From IMG/VR virus record IMGVR_UViG_3300042502_001233, positions 124,001 through 188,000 of that record: DNA of 64,000 nucleotides. One strand, written 5' to 3'. Both the position numbers and the translations under genes were made by a program. The notes beneath the pieces are model-generated. The model was not told where the DNA came from and ran no database searches. It worked only from the letters and a program-made list of their open reading frames with translations. Positions 17,411 through 40,640 of the stretch are shown one piece after another. Position 1 is the stretch's first letter, and every line of letters begins with the position of its first letter.

Positions 17411-17689
17411 TTAATTGAGTGGTATATTACCAGATTTCATTCTTGATTTTAATGCGTCTCCAGAAATGCTTGTTTTTCTATTACCCTTGCTGTTGGTTTG
17501 GTTTTTCTGTATGTTTTCAACCTCTTCTTGTCTTTCAACGTTTTGTTTCATCAATAAACTTAAAAAGAATCTTCTTTCATAAGTCGGCATACACAGTACA
17601 TCTGTGTAAGACATTTTTAAATGTTGCATACAAATATAAACCTCTTCTAATAACGGAACTTTATAGCTTGATGTTAGGCCAAAAAAAGT
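17411..17689 (-). CDS. Tail assembly chaperone C-terminal extension (probably reached by frameshift)
   Basis: Frame overlaps the upstream gene at a T7 run. The track start at 17740 is TTG inside the upstream gene. Sequence LLEEVYICMQHLKMSYTDVLCMPTYERRFFL resembles chaperone 'T' parts. Confidence 0.55.
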   Translation of the reverse strand, partial: TFFGLTSSYKVPLLEEVYICMQHLKMSYTDVLCMPTYERRFFLSLLMKQNVERQEEVENIQKNQTNSKGNRKTSISGDALKSRMKSGNIPLN

Positions 17690-18950
17690 TGAAGTTAAGT
17701 GGAAGAAAGGTGGCCACAGACCCACCCCCAGGAGTCTCAACCTCTATATTCAAATCAATACCAGATTCAATAGAATCAACATATGCATCAAATGCTCTAG
17801 CATCAGATATTCTCATAGAATTAGCGATGTCTCTAATCATTCCTCTATCTCTACTACCGTTTACTTCAACAATCATTCTTTCTAATCTATATGTATTTGA
17901 ATTATTTACTGGGATGTTTCTTTCTTTTTCATCGGTAACAATTTTTTCGATAGCATCTACATCACCCATAGTCAACAATCTGAATTTAATTTCAGCTTTG
18001 GTCAAAGGTAATTGAAAATAAAACAATCCTTCTTCATCTGGATTTTCATTTAACTCTATTGTTTTTAACTCATTAAGGTTAATTTCAGTATCAAAAGGTT
18101 CGCTTAACTCATCCAACAAAGTAACTGGATACATTTCACCATATGCTGTAGCTCTTAACCACAACATAATAGCATTTCTATCACCAGGCAATAAATCTTT
18201 ATATCTAAGCGTCGGTTCCAATATCTTTCTGTTGATAAGAATCTCTAAAAACTCCCCGCTTTGAAGTAAGTTTGGACTTGTAAGAATGTTTTCATCCGCT
18301 GTAGTCATATACGCTAACCTTACACTCTCTTTTTTGTTTTTGTACAATTTACCTTTTGAAGGTAACGGAATAACGTCAAATGGTGCGTTGTAGTTAGGTT
18401 GACTCAATTCTAGAATATAAGGGTCAACACCAGTTTGTGAAGTCACAAAAGGTTCTATTCTAGGTTGTGTAATAGCTGGTGAAGACGGTTGTGGTGTGTT
18501 GTAACCACTTGGTTGATTTGTTTGCATATTTGTTGTTGTATTATATTGTCTATTCATTGCTTCTTCAGACATTTTTTGATAGTTTTGAGTTTGTTGTCTA
18601 TTTTTAGCTAATTGTTCATCTCTCAGTTTCATCAAATCTTCGTTTGGGTCTTTTTGAGTTACAAATCTAGTAGTCTGTCTTTCAGATAACGCTGGGTCTT
18701 TAACAACACCAACAGTGTTTTTCATTTCTAATTGAGCGGCTGTTCTAGCCATCATCATTTCAACACTATTGTTTTGGTTTAGATAATTGTATTGTTCTCC
18801 TTCAACGTTTTCAGGAACTTTTACTGATGAATAAATTTGATTTACTACTTGTGATTTTTCTGCTTCATACGCGGCCAATTTTGATTGTTCTTCTGCTGCG
18901 TTTTGTATTTGTGATTGCGAAGGAATCACGTTAGGTCTTTTTTCTGACAT
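17661..18950 (-). CDS. Tail assembly chaperone / T4 gp26-like baseplate hub assembly protein
   Basis: 429 aa; DVIPLPSKGKLY...MTTADENILTSPNL...DRNAIMLWLR motifs; lies between tube and tape measure; ends FFWP. Confidence 0.65.
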   Translation of the reverse strand: MSEKRPNVIPSQSQIQNAAEEQSKLAAYEAEKSQVVNQIYSSVKVPENVEGEQYNYLNQNNSVEMMMARTAAQLEMKNTVGVVKDPALSERQTTRFVTQKDPNEDLMKLRDEQLAKNRQQTQNYQKMSEEAMNRQYNTTTNMQTNQPSGYNTPQPSSPAITQPRIEPFVTSQTGVDPYILELSQPNYNAPFDVIPLPSKGKLYKNKKESVRLAYMTTADENILTSPNLLQSGEFLEILINRKILEPTLRYKDLLPGDRNAIMLWLRATAYGEMYPVTLLDELSEPFDTEINLNELKTIELNENPDEEGLFYFQLPLTKAEIKFRLLTMGDVDAIEKIVTDEKERNIPVNNSNTYRLERMIVEVNGSRDRGMIRDIANSMRISDARAFDAYVDSIESGIDLNIEVETPGGGSVATFLPLNFNFFWPNIKL

Positions 18951-19107: not shown

Positions 19108-19596
19108 TTAAAACAAAAGTATGGCGCGGTCAAACCTTAACGTTGCAGTAATCTCTGCGATACCGTCATCCTCGAATGATAAGTCACCAAAACCAACGTT
19201 TGTTAACATAGTACCATCCAATAACCATTTCTCGATTACAACACCTGTAGGGTCAAGCATTTCTAACTCTACTGGACGTTTGTAACCAGCAGCATAACCT
19301 TGACGGCCAGTGATTGATTCAGAGTGAAGACGAACCCACTCCATAATTGCTTGTGAAGCAGATGGACCAATTGGGTCACGGAAAGTAACGTCTATCGCCT
19401 CCCAAGTAAATCTACCGATAACCCATGTAGATGTGTTAAGGAAAGGGATTTCTACCTCATTTTGTGTGATAGAAGGTCTAGAAGCAGAAGATAACCACCA
19501 TTGTTGGATACCTAAATCTGCTGGGAATGTAATTAACCAACGATTCTTTTTCTTAGGTTCGTATGGTAAGGGCATTTTCATTAATAAATCAGCCAT
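19108..19596 (-). CDS. Tail tube protein (T4 gp19-like)
   Basis: 162 aa; YEPKKKNRW, SASRP, GRFTWEAIDVTFRDPI, EKWLL...GDL, ITATLRFD motifs. Confidence 0.85.
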   Translation of the reverse strand: MADLLMKMPLPYEPKKKNRWLITFPADLGIQQWWLSSASRPSITQNEVEIPFLNTSTWVIGRFTWEAIDVTFRDPIGPSASQAIMEWVRLHSESITGRQGYAAGYKRPVELEMLDPTGVVIEKWLLDGTMLTNVGFGDLSFEDDGIAEITATLRFDRAILLF

Positions 19597-19602
19597 ATTT
19601 TC

Positions 19603-19633
19603 TTGTTTTTTATTATATTTATTAGTATATTTG
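19603..19633 (+). promoter_or_regulatory. Sigma70-type promoter of endonuclease 1
   Basis: TTG-N20-TATATTTG. Confidence 0.6.
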
Positions 19634-19680
19634 TATACTATTATGTTATTTTATAATAAATATCTAAAACTAAAAAAAAA

Positions 19681-21111
19681 ATGAATAAAAAAGAAAAATT
19701 TATAAATAAAGCAATAATTAAATTTGGTGATAAATTTAATTATGAAGAAATTGATTATATTGATTCTACAAAAAAAATAAAAATAAAATGTAATAAACAT
19801 GACTTATTTTTCTATCAATCCCCGTCTGAACATTTAAGGGGTAAAAATTCTTGTAATGAATGTACTAGAAACCCTAAAGTTAACACAAATTATTTTGTTC
19901 AAAAATCAAAAGAAATTCATGGTGATAAATATGATTATTCATTAACTAACTATATTGATTCATCAACAAAAGTAGATGTTATATGTAAAGAACATGGTGT
20001 TTTTAGTGTATTACCAAATAACCACTACAAACAAAATTGTCCAAAATGTAAAGAAAAAGATAGATATTTAACAACTAAAGATTTTATTGATAAAGCATGT
20101 ACCTTACATAATAAATATGATTATTCTGAAACAGAATATATGAATTCAAAAACTAAAATTAATATAAATTGCAAAGAACATGGTGTTTTTAAACAAATTC
20201 CCAACGACCATTTAAATGGGAAAGGTTGTCCAAAATGTGGTTTAGCTTATAATAAAATGGAAGATGAAATAAAAGAATTTATTAAATCTTTAAACATAAA
20301 TATTATAGAAAATTCAAAACAAATAATATCACCGTTAGAATTAGATATATTTATACCATCACATAATTTAGCTATTGAGTTTGATGGTTTATATTGGCAT
20401 TCTGAAGTTTATAAAGATAAAAATTATCATTTAAAAAAAACTGAACTTTGTCAAAGTAAAAATATTAGGTTAATTCATATATTTGAAGATGAATGGTTAT
20501 CTAAAAAAGAAATAGTTAAATCTAGATTAAAAAATATGTTAGGTTTAACACCAAATAAAATATATGGTAGAAAATGTGTTATAACAAAAGTTACAGCTAA
20601 AGAAACTAAAATATTTTTAGAAAATAATCACATACAAGGTAACGTTAATTCTAAAGTTAGGTTAGGGTTATATTATAATAATGAATTGGTTAGTCTTATG
20701 ACATTTGGCGGGTTAAGAAAAAACCTAGGGAATACATCAAACGAAAATAAATATGAGCTGTTTAGATTTTGTAATTTATCTAATCATATAATAATTGGTG
20801 GTGCAGATAAGTTGCTTAAATATTTTATCAAACATTATAAACCAAAAGAAATAATTAGCTACGCTGACAGAAGATGGTCACAAGGTGATTTATATAATAA
20901 ATTAAATTTTATTTTTTCACATAACACAAAACCAAATTATTTTTATTTGGTTAACGATAAAAGGGAAAATAGATTTAATTATAGAAAAGATATATTGGTC
21001 AAAGAAGGTTTTGATAAAAACAAAACAGAACATGGTATAATGTTAGAAAGAAAATTATATAGAATATATGATTGTGGTAGTATGTGTTTTAAAATTAAAA
21101 TGACCGATTAA
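19681..21111 (+). CDS. Free-standing endonuclease 1 (Zn-ribbon repeats + Vsr/PD-(D/E)XK-like nuclease + GNAT/Mom-like C-terminal domain)
   Basis: Three C..H...H...CPKC repeats; LDIFIP...AIEFDGLYWH; ELFRFC...GGADKL...SYADRRWSQGDLY; antisense to its neighbours. Confidence 0.75.
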   Translation: MNKKEKFINKAIIKFGDKFNYEEIDYIDSTKKIKIKCNKHDLFFYQSPSEHLRGKNSCNECTRNPKVNTNYFVQKSKEIHGDKYDYSLTNYIDSSTKVDVICKEHGVFSVLPNNHYKQNCPKCKEKDRYLTTKDFIDKACTLHNKYDYSETEYMNSKTKININCKEHGVFKQIPNDHLNGKGCPKCGLAYNKMEDEIKEFIKSLNINIIENSKQIISPLELDIFIPSHNLAIEFDGLYWHSEVYKDKNYHLKKTELCQSKNIRLIHIFEDEWLSKKEIVKSRLKNMLGLTPNKIYGRKCVITKVTAKETKIFLENNHIQGNVNSKVRLGLYYNNELVSLMTFGGLRKNLGNTSNENKYELFRFCNLSNHIIIGGADKLLKYFIKHYKPKEIISYADRRWSQGDLYNKLNFIFSHNTKPNYFYLVNDKRENRFNYRKDILVKEGFDKNKTEHGIMLERKLYRIYDCGSMCFKIKMTD

Positions 21112-21123
21112 TCGGTCATTTTA
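21096..21123. terminator. Perfect 28-bp palindrome / bidirectional terminator
   Basis: TAAAATGACCGATTAATCGGTCATTTTA; contains the stop codon of endonuclease 1. Confidence 0.75.
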
Positions 21124-21124
21124 T

Positions 21125-23626
21125 TTAACTTAACATAATTTTTTTTATTCTATTTAATTCTTCCATCAATTTATAGTTCTCATTTAAATCCATACTGTAT
21201 TGACCTTTATCATTTGGTTGAGGTTCAGCACTAGTTTGAGATGGATTTTTTTGTCTAGGCGCTGCACTAACATTTCGTTTTGTTTGTTTAGTTTTACTTT
21301 GTTTACCACTAGCAGCAGCTTGTTTTCTAAGTTTAACCATGTATTGAAACAACGCTATTGAATCATCCAAAAATTGTAATAAATGTTTTTTAAATTTCTT
21401 TCTGTCTTGAGCATTTTTTTCGAATTGTGTTCTAGCAGCATTAGGGTCGGCTTCATTCATTTTACCAATACCACCTAATTTATCAATTAGACCAGATTGT
21501 TTGTATTTACCAGTGTATATTGTTTTGAATATATCATTGATAAAGTTAGCCATATTTTGATATGCTTGTTGGTTTACAGTTACTATGTTGAACATTTTAT
21601 TAAAATCAGTCTTAACTATAGGGTTTTGTCTAAATCTTTCCAAAAATTGGTCAAAAACTTTATCACCAGTTGGTTTAAGGTTTCTAATTTTATTTCTTAA
21701 CTGTTCAACTCTGTTTAATAAATTTTCAAATTCTACAACTCTAGTTGGGCTAACGTTTTTGTTCAAAAACTTAACCAAAGCTTTATCTCTAAAGTATTTT
21801 GCTTCATCCAACATCTCTTCATCCAACAATGCTTCAGCTAAAGTATTTTTAGGTCCTTTACCAAATTTTTTCTCACTGTTAACAATAAAACCAAATAAAT
21901 TACGTAAAGAGTTGTATAAATCATCATTCATTGCTCCATCAGCGCTATTATCAGTTTTTGTTGTTTTTTGTTTTCCAGTATCTACTCCAGTTCCAGTGTC
22001 TACTCCTGTATCTACACCAGTTCCAGTATCTACACCAGTATCTGTACCAGTATCTACACCAGTATCTGTACCAGTATCGTTTCCTGTTTCATCACCTGTT
22101 GGGGCTGGTATCAAACCAACACCACCATCTAACCCACGCATAGATTGATACAACGCGTTAAGTGTTGCAGCTCTTGATGATTTTTGACCTTTCATTCTAA
22201 CCAATTTAACAGCAGCACCAGTAGCTAACAACCCAATACCAACACCAGCTAACACAGGACCTAAACCTATTAACTTACCAGCTAACGCAGTACCAGCTCC
22301 TTTTACAAGCGTTTTAGTTGCTTGTTTAACAACAATAGTTGCAAAGAATTTAGCAGAACTAGATACACCAAATAGGTTTTGTCCACCACTCATACTACCA
22401 AAAGTTTGGTCAGCTTTGTTGAATAAATCACCCATACTAGCTTGAGGGTTAGAACTAATCATTTGTTGTAATTTTTGCATTTGACCCATTGAGTCGCCAC
22501 CACCATTACCATCAAACATGTGACTAACGTTTTCTGAACCAAATTTGTCAACAAATTGCTGCATATCAGCACCAGTTTTAATATCTTTACCCATTAACTT
22601 ACTAGCCCAATGAACAAAACCTTGTTTGTCATCTGGTCCACCAGTAATATCTTGAGTTATAGCTGGTGTTCTAACTATTTTATCACCACCACCTAGTACC
22701 GTTTCTAACCAAGTTTTAAACCATTCAGTTTGAGCCATCCATCCTAATGCACCTAACGCAGCACCAGTTCCAGCCAATATCAATGGTAATTTGTTAGATT
22801 TAAGGGTATCCATCCTTGTACTATCAAAATCTTCACCATCACCTCTTTTAGCTTGTAATTTAGACCTAATATCACCAGAATCTAAAGGGTCTTCGTCAGG
22901 GGCTACGTCTTCATAATCAACATCTTCAATATCGTTATTTGATTTATAGTTACCAGCACTACCTTGTCCACTAACTTTTGGCCCAGTAGTACCCATTTGT
23001 GAATTACCAGTTCTAGCTGGAAGAGCTTCATCTATACCAAAATATTCATCAATTTGACACATTTGTTCTTCATCAAGGTCATATTCTTCATTCATCAAAT
23101 CATCTTCACCTAGTTTGTCTTCACTCTCATCAAAACCAGAATAAACAGCAGCTAAGTCAGTATCTAAGAATTTTTTTGTGTAGTCTCTTAAATCAGTAAT
23201 AATACCATTAGCAGCGTCAATCGGCATATAACCTTCTTCCTGTGGTGCTTTTTTAGTTGCAGCAACAACTGAATCATATATTGCAGCGATTTCCATAACA
23301 GTTTTTAAGAATTGTTGTGGGTCTTTATTATTAGGGAAATCAGGATTTTCTTCTCTAATTTTAGAATCAAGATTTTTAATTAACTCATTACCTTCTTTAT
23401 CAATAATTTGTTGGATTTTTCTTGCAGCTTCTTGGTCAATTTTACCTTTTCCGAAAATTTTACCGTTGGCTTTGTATCTACCTAATTTAGATAATCCGTA
23501 TTTTACAGAATCCCAAAAACCTTCATCTAACCTTTCGTTACCTTCTATCTTTTCTAGTGTTTCTTTAAGGATTTCATTGATGATAACTGTATGTTGTTGT
23601 TCTGTAAGTATTAATTTTTTAGCCAT
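21125..23626 (-). CDS. Putative internal head/ejection protein with hydrophobic helices and DTG repeats
   Basis: 833 aa; leader MAKKLILTEQQ; many (L/I/M)xE motifs; two Gly/Ala-rich hydrophobic stretches. Confidence 0.55.
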   Translation of the reverse strand: MAKKLILTEQQHTVIINEILKETLEKIEGNERLDEGFWDSVKYGLSKLGRYKANGKIFGKGKIDQEAARKIQQIIDKEGNELIKNLDSKIREENPDFPNNKDPQQFLKTVMEIAAIYDSVVAATKKAPQEEGYMPIDAANGIITDLRDYTKKFLDTDLAAVYSGFDESEDKLGEDDLMNEEYDLDEEQMCQIDEYFGIDEALPARTGNSQMGTTGPKVSGQGSAGNYKSNNDIEDVDYEDVAPDEDPLDSGDIRSKLQAKRGDGEDFDSTRMDTLKSNKLPLILAGTGAALGALGWMAQTEWFKTWLETVLGGGDKIVRTPAITQDITGGPDDKQGFVHWASKLMGKDIKTGADMQQFVDKFGSENVSHMFDGNGGGDSMGQMQKLQQMISSNPQASMGDLFNKADQTFGSMSGGQNLFGVSSSAKFFATIVVKQATKTLVKGAGTALAGKLIGLGPVLAGVGIGLLATGAAVKLVRMKGQKSSRAATLNALYQSMRGLDGGVGLIPAPTGDETGNDTGTDTGVDTGTDTGVDTGTGVDTGVDTGTGVDTGKQKTTKTDNSADGAMNDDLYNSLRNLFGFIVNSEKKFGKGPKNTLAEALLDEEMLDEAKYFRDKALVKFLNKNVSPTRVVEFENLLNRVEQLRNKIRNLKPTGDKVFDQFLERFRQNPIVKTDFNKMFNIVTVNQQAYQNMANFINDIFKTIYTGKYKQSGLIDKLGGIGKMNEADPNAARTQFEKNAQDRKKFKKHLLQFLDDSIALFQYMVKLRKQAAASGKQSKTKQTKRNVSAAPRQKNPSQTSAEPQPNDKGQYSMDLNENYKLMEELNRIKKIMLS
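21978..22082 (-). repeat. In-frame DTG(T/V) tandem repeat
   Basis: Encodes DTGTDTGVDTGTDTGVDTGTGVDTGVDTGTGVDTG. Confidence 0.85.
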
Positions 23627-23696
23627 ATTAAACTTTTAATTATAAATATTTGATATTAATTAAAAAGTTCGTATCTTTGTAGATAAAACCATTATT

Positions 23697-23972
23697 ATGA
23701 TTACAAAAGACCAATTATTTGAACAATACGATAAAAAAGTTGACGCTATATTAGATGTGTGTGATTGGAAAACAAATTTTACCAGTGAAGAAGTTTGTGG
23801 TATTGTTTATAAAATCCTAGAACAGAATAAAATAAACACTTCAATACCAGTTGAAGAGTTCCATAATCTTTATTCGGAAGCTGTGGATAAAATATGGACT
23901 AGTGATATAACAATGCGACAAATAACCGACATTGTTTACGATACATTACTTTCTAAGAATATTGTTGAGTAA
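23697..23972 (+). CDS. Hypothetical early protein
   Basis: 91 aa; TTG-N19-TATCTTTG at 23650-23679. Confidence 0.6.
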   Translation: MITKDQLFEQYDKKVDAILDVCDWKTNFTSEEVCGIVYKILEQNKINTSIPVEEFHNLYSEAVDKIWTSDITMRQITDIVYDTLLSKNIVE

Positions 23973-24356
23973 CCCAGATTCAGTCAACTCATCTTCCATA
24001 CCCAAAGCTTTTGCGTATTGATTAAAATTGCTAACTATTTTTTGGTAGTTTTTAATCATTTTTTTGTGTGGTTCAATCATTCCTTTGGTTTCCAAGTCTT
24101 GAATCAATTCTTCGCGCTTTTTAGGGTCTGAAATAATAGTTTTGATGTTAGACATCGCTTTAGTACTGTTAGTGGCTTTATCAGCGTCTATTTTGTTCTG
24201 TTTGGTTAAATTAATACCTAATATCTTTGCAAAACCCATAAGAGTTAACTTATCATGATTAAATGATATTTCTTTGTCTTCCACAAGCATTCTTTCTTTT
24301 TGTTCGTGGATTAAAATTCTTTGATATTGTTCTTTGGTAATCTTTAACTTTGTCAT
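23946..24356 (-). CDS. Putative internal head protein (true start probably MTKLKITKEQY at 24356)
   Basis: Late motif at 24368-24375 lies just upstream of this ATG; same leader as 16375 and 21125. Confidence 0.6.
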   Translation of the reverse strand: MTKLKITKEQYQRILIHEQKERMLVEDKEISFNHDKLTLMGFAKILGINLTKQNKIDADKATNSTKAMSNIKTIISDPKKREELIQDLETKGMIEPHKKMIKNYQKIVSNFNQYAKALGMEDELTESGLLNNILRK

Positions 24357-24432
24357 AATCTTTTTACTATAAATATCATATAAAACAAAAAAGCTCCCAT
24401 ATTTGGAAGCTTTGATGTTTTGTTTATTTTTA

Positions 24433-24474
24433 TTAGATATTATCAAAAGAAGCACCAGTATTCATGATAACAAA
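24433..24474 (-). pseudogene. Orphan duplicate of the sheath 3' end (FVIMNTGASFDNI*)
   Basis: 42 bp matching 26362-26403 with one synonymous mismatch; 38 bp identical. Confidence 0.9.
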
Positions 24475-24524
24475 ATTTTATTTTTTTTATTGACTTATGT
24501 TATATTTATTAGTATATTTGTATT

Positions 24525-26333
24525 ATGAAAAAAATAAATAAATTTTTAGAAAAATGTAATAATGTACATGGTAATGTATATGATTATTCTTTAGTTAATT
24601 ATATTAATAATAAAACTAAAGTTAAAATAATTTGTTCGATTCATGGTGAATTTGAACAGACACCAGACAAGCATATAAACTCAAAACAAGGATGTCCAAA
24701 ATGTTCGTCAAACTATAAATTAACAAATGAAAATTTTATAACTATATCAAATAAAATCCACAAGAATACTTATAATTATACCAACACAGTTTACTTAAAT
24801 GCAAATTCTGATGTTGATATAATTTGTGAACATCATGGTCTTTTTAAACAAAGACCTAGTGCACATATGTCAGGTCAAGGGTGTCCAAAATGTGCTGGTA
24901 AAAATAAAACCAACAGTGAGGTAGTTAATGAATTTGTTACTGTTCATAAAGATAAATACGATTATTCTTTAGTTAATTATGTTAACCAAAAAACACCATT
25001 AAAAATACTATGTAAAGAACATGGTATTTTTGAACAAACCTATAACACACATAAAAACGGTCACGGGTGTCCAAAATGTGTTGGTAGGAATAAAACAAAC
25101 GAACAATTTATTAAACAAGCAAAAAAAATACACAATAATAAATACAATTATTCGTTGGTTGATTATAATAAATCCAACGATAAAATAAAAATTATATGTC
25201 CAATTCATGGTGAATTTGAACAAAATTCAAACAACCACTTAAATGGAAATGGTTGTCCAAAATGTAAGGGGTTATCAATAATAGAAAAAAAGACAAAGAC
25301 AACTGAACAGTTTATAAGTGAAGCTAAACTTGTTCATGGTGATAAATATGATTATTCTTTAGTTGAATATAAAAATTGTAAAGATTGTATTAAAATTAAA
25401 TGTGTAGAACATGGTGAGTTTGAACAAACACCAGAAATACATTTATCTGGTTGTGGTTGTCAAAAATGTGGTTTTAAATACAATTATAACGAAATCATGA
25501 TAAGCGATTTTATTAAAAGTTTAAATATAAAGACAATTAATAATTCTAGAAAAATAATATCACCACTAGAATTAGATATATTTATACCATCACATAATGT
25601 AGCAATTGAATACAACGGTTTATATTGGCATAGTGAAATAAATAAACCATCTAACTATCATTTAAATAAAACTGAAATGTGTGAAAAACAAGGTATTCAG
25701 TTAATCCATATTTTTGAAGATGAATGGTTATACAAACAAGATATTGTAAAATCTAGACTAAAAAATATATTAGGGTTAACACCCAATAAAATATATGCTA
25801 GAAAATGTGTTATAAAAGAAATAGATATTGAAACATCAAAAAAATTTTTAAATGAAAACCATATTCAAGGTAATGTAAATAGTAGTATTAAAATCGGATT
25901 GTTTTATAATAATGTGTTAGTCAGTTTAATGACATTTGGTAAGGGTAGGATAGCCCTAGGTGGTAATTCAAATCAATTTGAATTGCTTAGATTTTGTAAT
26001 AAATTAGAATCTATCGTTATTGGTGGTGCAGATAAATTACTTAAATATTTTATAAAAACCTATAACCCAAAAGAAATAATTAGTTATGCTGATAGAAGAT
26101 GGAGTCAAGGTGGTTTATACGATAAATTAAACTTTATTAAAACTCATAACTCACAACCAAATTATTGGTATATTAACAATAATCGAAGAGAATATAGATT
26201 TGGTTATAGAAAATCAATACTAGTTAAAAAAGGTTTTAACCCAAATAAAACCGAACACCAAATTATGTTAGATAGAAAAATATACCGAATTTATGATTGC
26301 GGTAATATAGCATACAAAAAAACCCTCTATTAA
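24525..26333 (+). CDS. Free-standing endonuclease 2, paralogue of 19681..21111
   Basis: 602 aa; five Zn-ribbon repeats; the same IISPLELDIFIPSHN and IHIFEDEWL nuclease region and GNAT-like tail. Confidence 0.75.
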   Translation: MKKINKFLEKCNNVHGNVYDYSLVNYINNKTKVKIICSIHGEFEQTPDKHINSKQGCPKCSSNYKLTNENFITISNKIHKNTYNYTNTVYLNANSDVDIICEHHGLFKQRPSAHMSGQGCPKCAGKNKTNSEVVNEFVTVHKDKYDYSLVNYVNQKTPLKILCKEHGIFEQTYNTHKNGHGCPKCVGRNKTNEQFIKQAKKIHNNKYNYSLVDYNKSNDKIKIICPIHGEFEQNSNNHLNGNGCPKCKGLSIIEKKTKTTEQFISEAKLVHGDKYDYSLVEYKNCKDCIKIKCVEHGEFEQTPEIHLSGCGCQKCGFKYNYNEIMISDFIKSLNIKTINNSRKIISPLELDIFIPSHNVAIEYNGLYWHSEINKPSNYHLNKTEMCEKQGIQLIHIFEDEWLYKQDIVKSRLKNILGLTPNKIYARKCVIKEIDIETSKKFLNENHIQGNVNSSIKIGLFYNNVLVSLMTFGKGRIALGGNSNQFELLRFCNKLESIVIGGADKLLKYFIKTYNPKEIISYADRRWSQGGLYDKLNFIKTHNSQPNYWYINNNRREYRFGYRKSILVKKGFNPNKTEHQIMLDRKIYRIYDCGNIAYKKTLY

Positions 26334-26344
26334 GAGGGTTTTTT
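26317..26344. terminator. Bidirectional terminator containing the endonuclease 2 stop codon
   Basis: AAAAAACCCTCT-atta-AGAGGGTTTTTT. Confidence 0.75.
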
Positions 26345-26361
26345 ATTTATTATTTTAATAA

Positions 26362-29202
26362 TTATATATTATCAAAAGAAGCACCAGTATTCATGATAAC
26401 AAACTCAAGTTGAATAAACTCTAAAGCTCTAGTTGGCTTCAAGAAAATTTGACCTGTAAGTTGATTTCTGTCGATATCTTCTGGGTCGTTTGAAAGAACC
26501 ACTCTAAAGTCTGTAAGACCTCTTTCACTTCTAATGTTATCTAAGATTGGGTTAACCAACGCTAAGAATTGATTTCTAACCACGTTATCATTTTGTTCAA
26601 ACAACAATCTGATAGAAACAGCAGAGATAAGTTTTCTTGCTTGTAACAACAATCTTCTTACGTTAATTCTGTCAAGAGCAGACTCTTTAACTTGCATTGT
26701 TTTATTACCCCAGATTTTAATACCATCTGTTGTAAACGTAGCGATTGGGTTGATTCTAGCTTCGTACAACGTATCTCTTTCAGCAAGAGTAAGTTTTTTA
26801 CGAGCTTGGATTGCATCAACATCACCTCTGTTAATACCAGCAACCGCGAACCAAGGGAAAGCAATGTTGTCAGTAAGAGCGATGTTTCTAACTACATCTC
26901 TTGTTGGCGGCATCCAAATGTAAACGTTGTTTTCTGTATCGTTTACTTGAATCCATGGCCAATAAGTACAAGAGTAGTTACTATCATACATACCATCTAA
27001 ACGGTCAGAAACTTCTTCAGCGCTTATTACATCACCAGATAAATCAGTATCTGGTGTTGTCATAATGTACAACGAGTCAGCTCTATCTTGTTCAACCATA
27101 TCGATTGTAGCTTCAATTAAGTTGCTGTTGTAATCGTTGTCGATACCTGGGGTTGCGAATACGTTAATATTAACAGCTTCTGGGTTTCTAAATGTCCAAA
27201 TAGCTTCTAGGTAAGCATAGTAATCAGAGTTGATACCAATATCACCGTTAGTAAGAGTTCTATATTTGAATATTTCACTTTGTAAACCAGCTTGTCCGTT
27301 AGTACCATTTACGACGAAACTATCTAAATTACTTCTTCTAGTTCTGTAAATATCCCAACCATCAAAACCACCGTAAGGTACAAATGTAAATTTACGTGCA
27401 AATATTTTTTCATAGTCAGTTCCTAACACACCAGCTTCAGTTCTAAACTCAGCATTACCAGTATCAAATAGGAATACTGGAGAATATGTGTCACCACTTG
27501 AGTTAATAACAATTTTAACATTGTCAATTGTAGCACCAGTAGCGTCAATATCCATGTGGAAACCATGTGTCATACCAGTCCACATATTTGAATCACCAAC
27601 TGTTGGAATACCTTTATAGTCAAAGAAATCAGAATCAATACCTAAAGTCTCAGAAAGACCTAAGAAAACTTTACGTTTATTTTCAAAAGCGCTATACGCT
27701 CTTTTATACGTTAACGTTGGGTCAACAACTGATTGTCCGTTTGAATCGTAATCTCTAATAGGGAAACCAATAAAACCAGCTGGGAAAGTTGTGCTAGTAT
27801 CACTAGTGTCATCCATTTCAATAAGAACGTAAGATGATTTTGAAGGGTATTCACCATTATAAGTACCAATTCTTCTAGCTATATAGTTGTTAGATGTTGG
27901 GTCAAGAGTACAACGACTAAAGCTTTCCAAGATTGTTGGTTGAGCGTCAGTATCGAAATAACTTCTTATAATAACATCAAACTCTTTAGTGTCTAATTTA
28001 ATATTTCTAATAGATATTTTGAATTGTTCGTTAGCAGCGTTACCATCAGAAATAGTCCAAAATCTGAATAATCTCAATACTTTAGTACCACGTAATTCTG
28101 ATACAACATATGGAGTTACAGCTGGGCTGTATTCTTGTAAGTAATCATCAAAACTTCTGTCATAATCAACAAGAGCTTGTTTTAAACCTCTGATTTTACC
28201 AGCTGCTCTGTCATCTTTAAACATTTCTCTATAGAATTCTTCAACAAACAAAGCTGTATTACCATCATCGTTAGTTCTACCTAATACTCTAGGTAAATAA
28301 TTTTGTTTTGTATTATCCATAGATAGTTGGTAACTAAACGCACCTTGTGTTGTTGATGTACCAGTCAATACAAAATCACCAACAGGGTTTGTAGTAGAAG
28401 TTGTAATACTTGTACTGAAATTTACGTTAGTTGAAGCTGTTATTTCAAATGCTGGAGATTGTAAAGTTGGGTCAACAGAACCTCTAGAACGTAACAACGC
28501 AACCAATTTATCTTCAATACCGCTATAAACAGTACCTGAATAAGTTACTGTAACACCAGTTGTAGAACCTGTTACAAAACCACCTGAAGTACCTACTGAA
28601 GTTACTTTTAAATCAAAAGAAATACCGTTAAAATTAGCACCCACTTTTTCATAATAAGGACCAACACTAACAACATCATTTACAGATGAAGTAGCCAAGA
28701 ATGCTAATTCAGAAGTCAATGTACCATCATTGATAAGTGTTTGAATCAAAGGAACTGAAGAAACAACTGTTACGTTAGTACCACCAGTTGTTGCTGTAAA
28801 TGTTATGAAATTTGAAGTTACTGAAGTTCCAGTGTTTGTTGTTACAACCGAAGCTGGGTCCAAAGCAGCATCCAAAGTGATACCCCATGCAAAACCAGCA
28901 TCATATCCAGAAAACCCTAATACTCTAGTTACGAATAATTGGTTTGATTGTGTTAAATATGATTTAGCGATGTATGGTAATTCATATTTAGGTGCCCCTG
29001 TGTCTTTAACTCTAGTCGCATTTTGCCCACCAAAGAAAGATTGGAACTCGCCATAGTTACCAACAAATATAGGTTGGAATGCTGGACCAATTGTAGTCTC
29101 ACCAACTAAACCTAATGTTGTTACACCTATCTGACGTGTGATAAAAGATAAGTCTTTTTCTGAAGTATATACACCAGGACTTACGAATACTTTTGTTGCC
29201 AT
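26362..29202 (-). CDS. Tail sheath protein
   Basis: 946 aa; VFVSPGVYTSEKD, GLVGETTIGPAF, YWPWI, PWFAVAG..RG, WGNKT, LDRINVRRLL, KPTRALEFI. Confidence 0.92.
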   Translation of the reverse strand: MATKVFVSPGVYTSEKDLSFITRQIGVTTLGLVGETTIGPAFQPIFVGNYGEFQSFFGGQNATRVKDTGAPKYELPYIAKSYLTQSNQLFVTRVLGFSGYDAGFAWGITLDAALDPASVVTTNTGTSVTSNFITFTATTGGTNVTVVSSVPLIQTLINDGTLTSELAFLATSSVNDVVSVGPYYEKVGANFNGISFDLKVTSVGTSGGFVTGSTTGVTVTYSGTVYSGIEDKLVALLRSRGSVDPTLQSPAFEITASTNVNFSTSITTSTTNPVGDFVLTGTSTTQGAFSYQLSMDNTKQNYLPRVLGRTNDDGNTALFVEEFYREMFKDDRAAGKIRGLKQALVDYDRSFDDYLQEYSPAVTPYVVSELRGTKVLRLFRFWTISDGNAANEQFKISIRNIKLDTKEFDVIIRSYFDTDAQPTILESFSRCTLDPTSNNYIARRIGTYNGEYPSKSSYVLIEMDDTSDTSTTFPAGFIGFPIRDYDSNGQSVVDPTLTYKRAYSAFENKRKVFLGLSETLGIDSDFFDYKGIPTVGDSNMWTGMTHGFHMDIDATGATIDNVKIVINSSGDTYSPVFLFDTGNAEFRTEAGVLGTDYEKIFARKFTFVPYGGFDGWDIYRTRRSNLDSFVVNGTNGQAGLQSEIFKYRTLTNGDIGINSDYYAYLEAIWTFRNPEAVNINVFATPGIDNDYNSNLIEATIDMVEQDRADSLYIMTTPDTDLSGDVISAEEVSDRLDGMYDSNYSCTYWPWIQVNDTENNVYIWMPPTRDVVRNIALTDNIAFPWFAVAGINRGDVDAIQARKKLTLAERDTLYEARINPIATFTTDGIKIWGNKTMQVKESALDRINVRRLLLQARKLISAVSIRLLFEQNDNVVRNQFLALVNPILDNIRSERGLTDFRVVLSNDPEDIDRNQLTGQIFLKPTRALEFIQLEFVIMNTGASFDNI

Positions 29203-39324: not shown

Positions 39325-39597
39325 ATGGTAACAATTTACACAATGCAAAACTGCCCATATTGTGCAGAATTAAAAGAACTTCTAACTACTGAAAATATCG
39401 AATTTAACGATATAGATATTTTTGACAAAAAACATGAAAAAGAAGTTGGAGAAATAATGGAAGCGTCAAAAGCTGAAGAAGTTCCAATAGTTAGGATTGA
39501 AAAACAATTATTCATCCCTAACGTTTCTTTTAAAAGTATTACAGAAGCTTGCTATTTGGTTAAAAAAATATTAAGTGATTCCGATATAACTTCATAA
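39325..39597 (+). CDS. Glutaredoxin (NrdH-like)
   Basis: YTMQNCPYC active site, VP motif. Confidence 0.85.
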   Translation: MVTIYTMQNCPYCAELKELLTTENIEFNDIDIFDKKHEKEVGEIMEASKAEEVPIVRIEKQLFIPNVSFKSITEACYLVKKILSDSDITS

Positions 39598-40640
39598 TAA
39601 GGTATTCTAATTAATCTAATATTATTATCAAGACAAAATTTTGTCTTGATAGAATCGTTATGTTTTATTTTTAAAAAACCTAGTTCACCGCCAAATTTGT
39701 TTATAGGTTTATAATGTTGGATTCCGTCGTATTCAATACATATATTATGGTTTGGTAAATAAAAATCAAACGGTAGTACTTGAATGTTTTTGCAATTTAC
39801 AAACGTGTGTTGTTGCTTAAATAAAATATTATTTTCAACTAGATATTCCCTAATCTTTTTTTCACCTTTTGATTCTTTACAAATAGGGCAACCATTGCCC
39901 CTCAAGTGCATATTAGGGGTCTGGTTAAACATACCATGAACAGGGCAAATTATTTTAACTTTAGTTTTTGATTTTAAATAATCAACCATAGAGTAGTCAT
40001 ATTTATTACCATGTATTTTTTTAGCTTCTAAAATAAAATCATTATTAGTCTTATCCCTACCAACACATTTTGGACATCCTTGTTTTAATTTAATGTGAGC
40101 ACTTGGTAATTGTTCAAACACACCATGAACAGGGCAAATTATTTTCATTTTAGTTTTAACGTTTTTAAACTGTATTGATGAATAATCATATTTATCACCA
40201 TGTGTTTTTTTAGCTTCTAAAAGAATATCTTTAGTTGTTTTAAACAACCCATTACACTTACCACATGTTTGACCTTTTAAATGATTATCTGGTGTTTGTT
40301 CAAACATACCATGAATAGGGCAAATTATTTTAACTTTAGTTTTAGCATTTTTATAATTAACTAAAGAATAATCATATTTATTATTGTGTATTAAAATAGC
40401 CTCATTAATAAATATATTATCCTTTTTCCTAGTATTTTCACTAATTTTATCATAACCACATTTATTACAACCTTGTCCCCTAGAAATATGGTGATGTGGC
40501 GTTTGTTCAAACATACCGTGAATAGGGCAAATTATTTTTACTTTGGTCCTAACATCTTTATAATCAACTAATGAATAATCATACTTATTTTCATGTATTT
40601 TTTTAGCTTTTTCGATAAATTTTAAATTTTTATTTTCCAT
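39552..40640 (-). CDS. Free-standing endonuclease 3 (Zn-ribbon repeats + PD-(D/E)XK/DUF559-like nuclease)
   Basis: Four CPxHG...H...C..C repeats; LPFDFYLP...IEYDGIQH; RLIRIPY; late motif upstream. Confidence 0.75.
   Translation of the reverse strand: MENKNLKFIEKAKKIHENKYDYSLVDYKDVRTKVKIICPIHGMFEQTPHHHISRGQGCNKCGYDKISENTRKKDNIFINEAILIHNNKYDYSLVNYKNAKTKVKIICPIHGMFEQTPDNHLKGQTCGKCNGLFKTTKDILLEAKKTHGDKYDYSSIQFKNVKTKMKIICPVHGVFEQLPSAHIKLKQGCPKCVGRDKTNNDFILEAKKIHGNKYDYSMVDYLKSKTKVKIICPVHGMFNQTPNMHLRGNGCPICKESKGEKKIREYLVENNILFKQQHTFVNCKNIQVLPFDFYLPNHNICIEYDGIQHYKPINKFGGELGFLKIKHNDSIKTKFCLDNNIRLIRIPYYEVISESLNIFLTK

What the first reader, a model, noticed from the sequence alone, without database searches (positions are those of the whole stretch)
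19681..26333. Two paralogous nucleases fused to a Mom-like GNAT domain
After the Zn-ribbon array and nuclease core, both proteins carry about 170 aa with EL(F/L)RFC...GGADKLLKYF...ISYADRRWSQG.LY..LNF. This resembles the GNAT-fold Mom family, and phage Mu Mom hypermodifies adenine (established). A nuclease joined to a DNA-modifying-type fold could act as a self-protecting restriction-modification-like unit or read modified DNA. The two copies differ in Zn-ribbon number (3 versus 5), suggesting modular retargeting.
Basis: partly seen in the sequence, partly recalled or inferred. Interest (0 to 1): 0.65.

Follow-up and report, generated by a model that had tools for sequence, protein, structure and literature searches.

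The report
Hef-like homing endonucleases with Mom-type domain
The two genes are selfish, mobile "homing endonuclease" genes of the known Hef-like family, lodged between the tail genes of a giant phage; their C-terminal Mom-like domain is real, its role in homing has never been tested, and the nuclease-Mom fusion itself is already published.

Summary
ORF A (19681-21111, 476 aa) and ORF B (24525-26333, 602 aa) are paralogs. Each has an array of CxxH...CxxC zinc modules (3 in A, 5 in B), then a Vsr-like nuclease, then a GNAT domain of about 188 aa carrying the quoted motifs.

The GNAT/Mom reading holds:
- Pfam Mom (PF25680) scores over its cut-off for A.
- The AlphaFold model (pLDDT 95) has Mu Mom (8BV8) as its best Foldseek match.
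- The nuclease matches I-Bth0305I (3R3P).

The proteins are not an oddity. Nuclease plus GNAT is the constant core of the widespread Hef-like free-standing homing endonucleases (phrog_559/3339; over 1100 phage records). Iyer et al. (2021) already described Mom-REase fusions in jumbo phages and read them as restriction-modification-like.

Here the genes behave as selfish elements:
- Close relatives carry both, one or neither at the same tail sheath/tube sites, or only deletion remnants.
- Their GC is 23-25% against 31% for the genome.
- Each has its own promoter-like box and terminator.
- The zinc arrays evolve fastest.

The GNAT pocket is as conserved as the nuclease site, so it probably matters for homing. 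Mom's essential Ser124 is Asp in both proteins, and Asp149/Arg151 drift across the family. I favour an accessory role engaging nucleic acid over protective DNA modification, but this is untested.

The parts
19614..19636 (+). Promoter-like element upstream of HEG-A. It is 23 nt and identical to the one upstream of HEG-B. It contains a Bacteroidota-type -7 box, TAnnTTTG (TATATTTG, about 19626-19633).
   Evidence: exact 23-nt copies occur only at these two sites in the 362-kb genome; looser copies lie upstream of other genes
19681..20247 (+). HEG-A zinc-module array: 3 CapR/DUF723/DUF4379-type treble-clef modules (aa 1-189). Presumed target-DNA reader.
   Evidence: Barth et al. 2023 for this module type in phage homing endonuclease genes
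20248..20544 (+). HEG-A Vsr-like (EDxHD-type) PD-(D/E)xK nuclease domain (aa 190-288). D222, E233, H240 and K253 are invariant family-wide. H250 is conserved in all but one aligned homolog (Gly in XapPhi3).
   Evidence: 3R3P, E 2.4e-5; 3R3P TM 0.80, rmsd 2.7
20545..21108 (+). HEG-A Mom-family GNAT domain (aa 289-476). H317, R362, G373 and Y405 are invariant family-wide. D376 sits at the position of Mom Ser124.
21100..21126 (+). Hairpin plus T-run (terminator-like) overlapping the stop codon of HEG-A.
   Evidence: read directly from the sequence
24501..24523 (+). Promoter-like element upstream of HEG-B: the same 23 nt as for HEG-A. It ends 1 nt before the ATG at 24525; its -7 box (about 24513-24520) ends 4 nt before the ATG, so the mRNA may be leaderless.
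24525..25478 (+). HEG-B zinc-module array: 5 modules (aa 1-318).
25479..25766 (+). HEG-B Vsr-like nuclease domain (aa 319-414).
   Evidence: 71% identical to A
25767..26330 (+). HEG-B Mom-family GNAT domain (aa 415-602).
   Evidence: PF25680 25.2 bits alone, 27.3 summed in frame
26320..26345 (+). Hairpin plus T-run (terminator-like) overlapping the stop codon of HEG-B.
19108..19596 (-). Tail tube gene, a conserved neighbour flanking insertion site A (98-99% aa identity in relatives with and without the HEG).
26362..29202 (-). Tail sheath gene, a conserved neighbour flanking insertion site B.

Best explanation
A and B are two diverged paralogous free-standing homing endonuclease genes of the Hef-like family, inserted in the tail sheath-tail tube interval of a 362-kb T4-like jumbo phage whose host is probably in the Bacteroidota. 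Each is a self-contained cassette with its own promoter-like box and its own terminator. The inferred mechanism has three steps. First, the N-terminal string of zinc modules reads a long DNA site in a related genome that lacks the gene. Second, the Vsr-like (EDxHD-type) nuclease cuts there. Third, recombinational repair from the HEG-bearing genome copies the cassette in. The Mom-family GNAT domain is a fixed part of the catalytic core: it packs confidently against the nuclease and is equally conserved. My best guess (about 50%) is that it works as an accessory that engages nucleic acid, for example by clamping or flipping a base at the cleavage site or by binding a nucleotide-type ligand, rather than as a genome-protecting Mom enzyme. 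What is shown: domain identities, family membership, presence/absence polymorphism, decay, and conservation patterns. What is inferred: cleavage, homing, the target site, and any role of the GNAT domain.
For: Family membership. Full-length matches to phrog_559/phrog_3339, 'homing endonuclease', at E 1e-110 to 1e-164. tblastn finds 1129 phage records, annotated as Hef-like homing endonuclease or nuclease/acetyltransferase. The core is 37% identical (E 7e-53) to the ORF lying between nrdA and nrdB of Tequatrovirus G8, which is the published Hef position (review text). Taylor et al. 2011 place Hef-type enzymes in the Vsr-like EDxHD family. Structure. AF2 gives pLDDT 95.1 and pTM 0.90. 3R3P matches at TM 0.80, and 8BV8 is the top hit. 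Mobility. Relatives with 93-99% identical tube protein have sheath-p169-tube with no HEG (L007, L009-L013), only HEG-A (L005) or both (L006). More distant relatives (88%, L024-L027) have sheath next to tube with nothing between. L040 and L039 hold deletion remnants. The same sheath/tube or capsid-gene intervals are occupied in Kuttervirus KE31, Limestonevirus, Acinetobacter phage Berthold and Vibrio phage D528. Campylobacter phage F370 has 12 matching places. Cassette features. GC is 22.6% and 25.2% against 31.4% for the genome. A shared 23-nt promoter-like box and terminators are present. The zinc arrays evolve fastest, and GNAT is as conserved as the nuclease. GNAT pocket. H317, R362, G373 and Y405 are invariant down to 30% identity. 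Conserved Arg/Lys residues lie in the inserted helices.
Against: No cleavage, homing or target site is shown for these two proteins. I found no HEG+/HEG- correlated substitutions in the 5' part of the tube gene. The identification of the G8 ORF as Hef rests on synteny and on other authors' annotations, not on the U5 sequence, because the original paper is not held. The last acidic residue of EDxHD is a conserved His in this family. Strong conservation of Mom pocket residues is also what an active transferase would show. The homodimer prediction gave no verdict.
Confidence: 0.75

Rival explanations
1. Self-protecting restriction-modification-like unit. The Mom-type domain modifies adenines in the phage's own DNA. 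The fused nuclease then destroys unmodified host DNA or superinfecting phage DNA.
For: The domain is a true Mom-family member. A and B keep the equivalents of Mom H58, R111, D149, R151 and Y159. A helical insertion with conserved basic residues lies where Mom has its essential HTH-like insertion. The GNAT domain is as conserved as the nuclease. The prediction is published. Free-standing homing genes do need some form of self-immunity.
Against: Mom's essential Ser124 (S124A is dead) is Asp in A and B, and the position toggles D/S/N in their clade. Asp149 is Asn in the T-even and Acinetobacter Hef lineage, and Lys or Ala in others. Arg151 is Leu, Cys or Asp in many members. The genes are sporadic, multi-copy, decaying and low in GC, unlike a retained defence function. 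In a mixed infection, an enzyme acting in trans could not tell its own genome from the target genome (inference). No stand-alone Mom is present in the genome.
Confidence: 0.15
2. The GNAT domain is only a scaffold or dimerisation domain that brings two single-site nucleases together for a double-strand cut. Its pocket has no ligand.
For: Mu Mom is a dimer. I-Bth0305I works as a homodimer. The model shows tight nuclease-GNAT packing (pTM 0.90).
Against: Pocket residues H317, R362 and Y405 and the Gly loop stay invariant at 30% identity, which a mere scaffold would not require. I-Bth0305I dimerises without any GNAT domain. The homodimer prediction gave no verdict and counts neither way.
Confidence: 0.12
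3. The GNAT domain is a reader of modified or flipped bases that lets the nuclease work on, or select, hypermodified phage DNA.
For: From my own knowledge, not tested here: Hef-like genes are frequent in phage groups known for modified DNA, such as T-even, Ackermannviridae and Campylobacter phages; searches show their presence in those groups. The AF3 model in the Mom paper has Mom flipping its adenine into the pocket.
Against: No evidence was collected that this phage modifies its DNA. Only the two fused Mom domains were found with the Mom profile. The family also occurs in many other phage groups.
Confidence: 0.08

Closest known systems
Hef (homing endonuclease-like function) of T-even phage U5 and Hef-like free-standing endonucleases (Sandegren et al. 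2005; F-LimIII/VII/VIII/X of Dickeya phage LIMEstone1)
   Same: They share the same nuclease+GNAT core: 30-47% identity to nine phage homologs. They also share the free-standing position between conserved genes, including tail tube neighbours, and occur in multiple copies per genome.
   Different: The N-terminal DNA-binding part differs. Here it is 3 or 5 CapR/DUF723 zinc modules, while the T-even protein (530 aa) has a different N-terminal half. The Ser at the Mom Ser124 position is Asp in A and B.
I-Bth0305I, prototype of the EDxHD (Vsr-like) homing endonucleases, PDB 3R3P
   Same: The nuclease fold and most catalytic residues match: profile E 2.4e-5, TM 0.80, rmsd 2.7 A over 99 columns.
   Different: I-Bth0305I is intron-encoded, has N-terminal NUMOD/HTH modules with the nuclease at its C-terminal end, and has no GNAT domain. 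Its last catalytic Asp aligns with a conserved His here.
Phage Mu Mom, a Gly-tRNA-dependent DNA adenine N6 aminoacyl transferase, PDB 8BV8 (Silva et al. 2026)
   Same: Both are GNAT folds with an extra helical insertion. 8BV8 is the best Foldseek hit and gives the longest structural alignment (163-195 positions). The Pfam family is shared, and equivalents of H58, R111, D149, R151 and Y159 are present in A and B.
   Different: Here the domain is fused behind a nuclease rather than stand-alone. Ser124 is Asp and Tyr59 is Ile. The glycine loop is more canonical (G-G-A). Identity is only 15-20%. No modification activity is known.
Mom-REase fusions of group 2 jumbo phages (Iyer, Anantharaman, Krishnan, Burroughs, Aravind 2021, Viruses 13:63)
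   Same: This is the same architecture in the same kind of phage; A and B are further examples.
   Different: That paper reads them as restriction plus protective momylation and does not mention homing endonucleases. Here they are tied to the Hef family and shown to be sporadic mobile genes.
CapR/DUF723/DUF4379 zinc-module arrays of T5orf172 homing endonuclease genes in ICP1 and other phages (Barth et al. 2023)
   Same: They share the repeated zinc DNA-binding modules, a variable module number, and the proposal that module shuffling retargets the enzymes.
   Different: In A and B the modules are joined to a Vsr-like+GNAT core. The same genome also joins them to other nuclease types, including T5orf172-like ones.

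Membership tests
Hef-like / EDxHD (Vsr-like) homing endonucleases | Vsr-like PD-(D/E)xK nuclease fold | tested here: met
   The AF2 model matches 3R3P at TM 0.80, rmsd 2.7 A. The profile matches 3R3P at E 2.4e-5.
Hef-like / EDxHD (Vsr-like) homing endonucleases | The five EDxHD active-site residues (I-Bth0305I E170, D196, N208, H213, D222) | tested here: inconclusive
   E194, D222, D/N235 and H240 align and are conserved. The last Asp aligns with H250, which is His in all 70 close homologs and in 8 of 9 divergent ones. Taylor et al. nevertheless include Hef-type proteins in the family.
Hef-like / EDxHD (Vsr-like) homing endonucleases | Sequence homology to Hef-type proteins across the core | tested here: met
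   phrog_3339/559 match at E down to 1e-164. Identity to the nrdA/nrdB ORF of phage G8 is 37%, E 7e-53. Homologs of that G8 ORF include genes annotated Hef-like in phages 133, CP8, JC221 and PTm5, and the Hef-like-annotated gene of phage Internexus matches A and B directly.
Hef-like / EDxHD (Vsr-like) homing endonucleases | Free-standing gene between conserved genes, sporadic among close relatives | tested here: met
   Empty, singly filled, doubly filled and decayed sites occur among related viral contigs.
Hef-like / EDxHD (Vsr-like) homing endonucleases | Site-specific cleavage of the HEG-less allele and unidirectional gene conversion | not testable with these tools
   This needs biochemistry or co-infection crosses.
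Mom family (Pfam PF25680) | Score over the curated Pfam cut-off (27.1 bits) | tested here: met
   A scores 28.3 bits and 29.7 bits. B scores 25.2 bits alone and 27.3 bits summed in frame, so it is borderline. About two thirds of the 120 listed homologs carry a precomputed PF25680 annotation.
Mom family (Pfam PF25680) | GNAT fold closest to Mom, including the Mom-specific helical insertion | tested here: inconclusive
Mom family (Pfam PF25680) | Essential Arg111 | tested here: met
   R362 aligns with it and is invariant in all homologs examined.
Mom family (Pfam PF25680) | Essential Ser124 (S124A is inactive) | tested here: not met
   The position is Asp376 in A, with the equivalent Asp in B. 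Among 70 close homologs it is D 36, S 27, N 6, G 1. It is Ser in 8 of 9 divergent phage homologs. The mapping comes from a profile alignment, and an alternative alignment of this loop exists.
Mom family (Pfam PF25680) | Asp149 and essential Arg151 | tested here: met
   D396 and R398 are present in A, in B and in all 70 close homologs. They are not conserved in divergent Hef-likes, where D becomes N, K or A and R becomes L, C or D.
Mom family (Pfam PF25680) | Gly-tRNA-dependent N6-adenine modification of dsDNA | not testable with these tools
   This needs an enzyme assay and nucleoside analysis.
Restriction-modification-like self-protecting unit | A modification made by the unit blocks its own nuclease | not testable with these tools
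   No modification data are available.
Restriction-modification-like self-protecting unit | Retained as a stable defence or offence gene in the lineage | tested here: not met
   The genes are present, absent or decayed among relatives with 93-99% identical tube protein.
CapR/DUF723/DUF4379 zinc DNA-binding modules | Pfam cut-off passed and CxxH...CxxC ligands in each repeat | tested here: met
   DUF723 scores 47.4 bits and DUF4379 scores 29.7-40.5 bits. All eight modules align with conserved ligands.

The most novel reading that the evidence does not exclude
The Mom-type domain of Hef-like homing endonucleases is catalytically active or ligand-gated. One possibility is that it uses an aminoacyl-tRNA or acyl-CoA to mark an adenine in or near its own target site, giving the carrier genome immunity or blocking re-cleavage after homing. 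Another is that it couples cleavage to the charged-tRNA or CoA state of the infected cell. Either would be a new principle for homing endonucleases and a second biological use of Mom chemistry.
Probability: 0.2. Interest if true: 0.75.

Novelty: new member of a known kind. Interest (0 to 1): 0.4.

Why it matters
Hef-like genes are among the commonest free-standing homing endonuclease genes in large phages, yet the role of their constant GNAT half has never been tested. Mu Mom is now known to be a tRNA-dependent DNA aminoacyl transferase (2026). That makes the Mom-type domain in a proven homing endonuclease family a concrete, cheap question: is it a dead DNA-binding relic, a cofactor sensor or an active modifier? 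The two literatures, Hef/EDxHD homing enzymes and Mom-REase fusions read as restriction-modification-like, are not linked in any paper I could find in the held library. These particular two genes are ordinary members of the family.

Tried and rejected
- Single-sequence PDB search gave nothing for B and only a weak 3R3P hit for A. A profile was needed.
- The narrow 70-sequence profile did not reach 8BV8 by hmmsearch. Against the single Mu Mom sequence, hhalign was weak (E 0.063) and placed Ser124 differently. I prefer the profile-profile alignment with divergent members, which has near-equal spacing and no large indels. The Ser124 mapping remains the least certain residue assignment.
- The homodimer prediction of the nuclease+GNAT core gave no verdict (score 0.00, controls not run). 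It is no evidence either way.
- A search for substitutions in the 5' part of the tube gene that separate HEG-plus from HEG-minus relatives, as a hint to the target site, found none. Flanking intergenic DNA is too diverged to define insertion boundaries.
- The original Hef paper and Iyer et al. 2009 are not held.
- megablast of the region against cultured phages found only a 71% stretch in an uncultured megaphage.
Full report
**Setting.** The window is bases 124001-188000 of a 362,018-bp viral record that CheckV rates as complete. GC is 31%. The finding lies in a T4-like tail module. It includes a tail tube gene (19108-19596, -), a tail sheath gene (26362-29202, -) and a baseplate-hub-like gene (17661-18950, -). 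Two long ORFs run on the opposite strand: A (19681-21111, 476 aa) and B (24525-26333, 602 aa). Between them lie three genes without family matches: p833, p91 and p169.

**Observation.**
- A has three zinc modules of about 62 residues and B has five. Each has a CxxH...CxxC pattern, and all eight align with one another.
- Pfam calls them DUF723, DUF4379 ("probable treble clef zinc finger") and CapR, with the first two over their cut-offs.
- Behind the array comes a nuclease of about 100 residues, then a domain of about 188 residues carrying the quoted motifs.
- A and B are 71% identical in the nuclease and 67% in the last domain.

**Domain identities.**
- I aligned 70 nuclease+C-terminal cores (A1). 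The AlphaFold2 model is very confident: mean pLDDT 95.1 and pTM 0.90, so the two domains are predicted to pack rigidly.
- In Foldseek against the PDB, the top hit is 8BV8, the crystal structure of phage Mu Mom (E 1.5e-7, 195 columns). Many generic GNAT acetyltransferases follow. The N-terminal part hits 3R3P, the catalytic domain of the homing endonuclease I-Bth0305I (TM 0.80, rmsd 2.7 A, 23% identity).
- Sequence evidence agrees. Pfam Mom (PF25680) scores 28.3-29.7 bits for A against a cut-off of 27.1. B scores 25.2 bits, or 27.3 summed.
- A profile of Hef-type GNAT domains aligns with a Mom-family profile at E 3.4e-7 over 187 columns. The A1 profile finds 3R3P at E 2.4e-5.
- The GNAT/Mom claim is therefore supported.

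**What family this is.**
- Both proteins match PHROG families annotated as homing or HNH endonuclease over their full length (E 1e-110 to 1e-164).
- tblastn finds 1129 phage records. Their annotations include "Hef-like homing endonuclease", "homing endonuclease" and "nuclease/acetyltransferase". The word search finds 1783 proteins, and about two thirds of those listed are already tagged PF25680.
- The part shared by all of them is the nuclease+GNAT core. The N-terminal DNA-binding part varies.
- In Tequatrovirus G8 the homolog sits between nrdA and nrdB. That is where Hef of phage U5 was described, and Hef cleaves nrdB (review text).
- Taylor et al. 2011 placed Hef-type enzymes in the Vsr-like EDxHD family defined by I-Bth0305I.
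- Iyer et al. [quoted passage not shown] They read this as restriction plus protective momylation and did not mention homing endonucleases.

**Evidence that A and B are mobile selfish genes.** I fetched 80 related viral contigs through the tail tube protein and mapped the neighbours.
- Among relatives whose tube protein is 93-99% identical, L007 and L009-L013 have sheath-p169-tube with no endonuclease gene.
- L005 has only the A ortholog (92%). L006 has both (91% each).
- L016 and L018 have a 54-67% relative at site A.
- More distant relatives (88% tube identity, L024-L027) have sheath directly next to tube.
- L030, L032, L033, L038 and L041 have other Hef-like genes between sheath and tube or after the tube gene.
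- L040 keeps only the start of the first zinc module joined out of frame to the last ~110 residues of the GNAT domain. L039 keeps only three zinc modules. These are deletion remnants.
- The same kind of interval is occupied in unrelated phages: between tube and sheath in Kuttervirus KE31, next to the tube gene in LIMEstone1, between capsid genes in Acinetobacter phage Berthold, and between the topoisomerase subunit genes in Campylobacter phage F370, which has 12 matching places.
- A and B have 22.6% and 25.2% GC against 31.4% for the genome and 29-41% for their neighbours.
- Both are preceded by an identical 23-nt element, found exactly only at these two places in the genome. It contains TATATTTG, which fits the Bacteroidota -7 promoter box TAnnTTTG (consensus from my own knowledge). 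Both end in a hairpin with a T-run overlapping the stop codon.
- The genome holds five more genes that join the same zinc modules to other nucleases: three PD-(D/E)xK-like and two T5orf172-like.
- Across 88 full-length homologs the zinc modules are 37-48% identical (median), against 63-64% for nuclease and GNAT. This fits the module-shuffling idea already proposed for such arrays.

**The GNAT pocket.** Silva et al. 2026 showed that Mom transfers glycine from Gly-tRNA to N6 of adenine in dsDNA. R111, S124 and R151 are essential. D149, H58, Y59 and Y159 are important, and an HTH-like insertion (175-209) is required. In the profile alignment these residues map onto A as follows:

| Mom residue | Residue in A |
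|---|---|
| H58 | H317 |
| Y59 | I318 |
| R111 | R362 |
| S124 | D376 |
| D149 | D396 |
| R151 | R398 |
| Y159 | Y405 |

- Over homologs down to 30% identity, H317, R362, G373 and Y405 are invariant, as are the nuclease residues D222, E233, H240 and K253.
- The Ser124 position is Ser in 8 of 9 divergent phage homologs. In the clade of A and B it toggles (D 36, S 27, N 6, G 1 of 70), and it is Asp in both A and B.
- Asp149 is Asn in the T-even and Acinetobacter lineage, Lys in Vibrio phage D528 and Ala in XapPhi3.
- Arg151 is Leu, Cys or Asp in several homologs, while the neighbouring Arg397 is conserved instead.
- The loop before helix 3 reads G-G-A-(S/D)-K-L-L, which is closer to the canonical GNAT pyrophosphate loop than Mom's own (my reading).
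- The inserted helices carry conserved Arg/Lys residues.

**Interpretation.** A homing gene is selected only through its spread (established view). A pocket conserved as tightly as the nuclease site therefore probably serves cleavage, target engagement or tolerance by the carrier phage. It is unlikely to be a mere scaffold.

The full Mom catalytic set is not kept family-wide, and the essential Ser is replaced in A and B. That argues against conserved Mu-type momylation. I therefore favour an accessory role engaging nucleic acid or a ligand (about 50%). I rank protective modification at about 15-20%, a pure scaffold or dimerisation role at about 12%, and a modified-base reader at about 8%. None of these was tested. 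The homodimer prediction gave no verdict.

**Novelty.** The architecture, the family and the restriction-modification-like reading are all known. A and B are new members. What I did not find in the held literature is an explicit link between the experimentally founded Hef homing endonuclease family and the Mom family. Given the 2026 mechanism of Mom, that link makes a clear experiment possible. Interest is moderate.

**Limits.**
- No residue-level structural superposition was available, so the Ser124 mapping rests on profile alignment. An alternative alignment exists.
- The target sites are unknown.
- Two key older papers were not held.
- The large representative search and the read tools were not used.

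Noticed in passing
window 19614-19636 and 24501-24523 (+): An identical 23-nt element lies upstream of both endonuclease genes, although the coding regions have diverged to 58% protein identity. It contains TATATTTG, which fits the Bacteroidota -7 promoter box TAnnTTTG. Looser copies precede other genes in the genome. This hints at a Bacteroidota host; the best cultured-phage match for B is Tenacibaculum phage PTm1.
   Followed up: partly
window 39552-40640 (-); G000 294472-295605, 331454-332359, 261394-262095, 307683-308543: Five further genes join the same CapR/DUF723 zinc modules (1-4 copies) to other nuclease cores: three PD-(D/E)xK-like and two T5orf172/GIY-YIG-like. The phage therefore carries at least seven homing-endonuclease-like genes built on one DNA-binding module type.
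   Followed up: partly
window 21125-23626 (-): The 833-aa protein has a run of TG(V)DTG repeats, no PHROG match and a predicted hydrophobic stretch. It is present in only some close relatives (L005, L006, L014, L021), so it too is a variable insert between the sheath and tube genes.
   Followed up: no
L040:3000-3580 and L039:4985-5800: Two deletion remnants of Hef-like genes lie between the sheath and tube genes. L040 has the start of a zinc module joined out of frame to the last ~110 residues of the GNAT domain. L039 is an ORF with three zinc modules and no nuclease or GNAT domain.
   Followed up: yes
L046, L047, L050, L053 (upstream of the tube gene): More distant relatives show two tandem sheath-like matches upstream of the tube gene, which may be a duplicated tail sheath gene.
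   Followed up: no
whole window: TATAAATA, the T4 late-promoter consensus, occurs 36 times against 15.6 expected from shuffles (largest shuffle count 25). This fits T4-like late transcription.
   Followed up: no
L030:10428-11291, L038:5989-6954, L041:9950-10915, L044:10193-11155: Further Hef-like nuclease+GNAT genes lie just downstream of the tube gene in some relatives. The matches cover only the core, so these may lack zinc arrays.
   Followed up: no
L001 (Escherichia phage G8) 3834-5604: The nrdB gene next to the Hef-position ORF is annotated in two pieces with a 264-nt ORF between them. This is consistent with the known nrdB intron of T-even phages.
   Followed up: no
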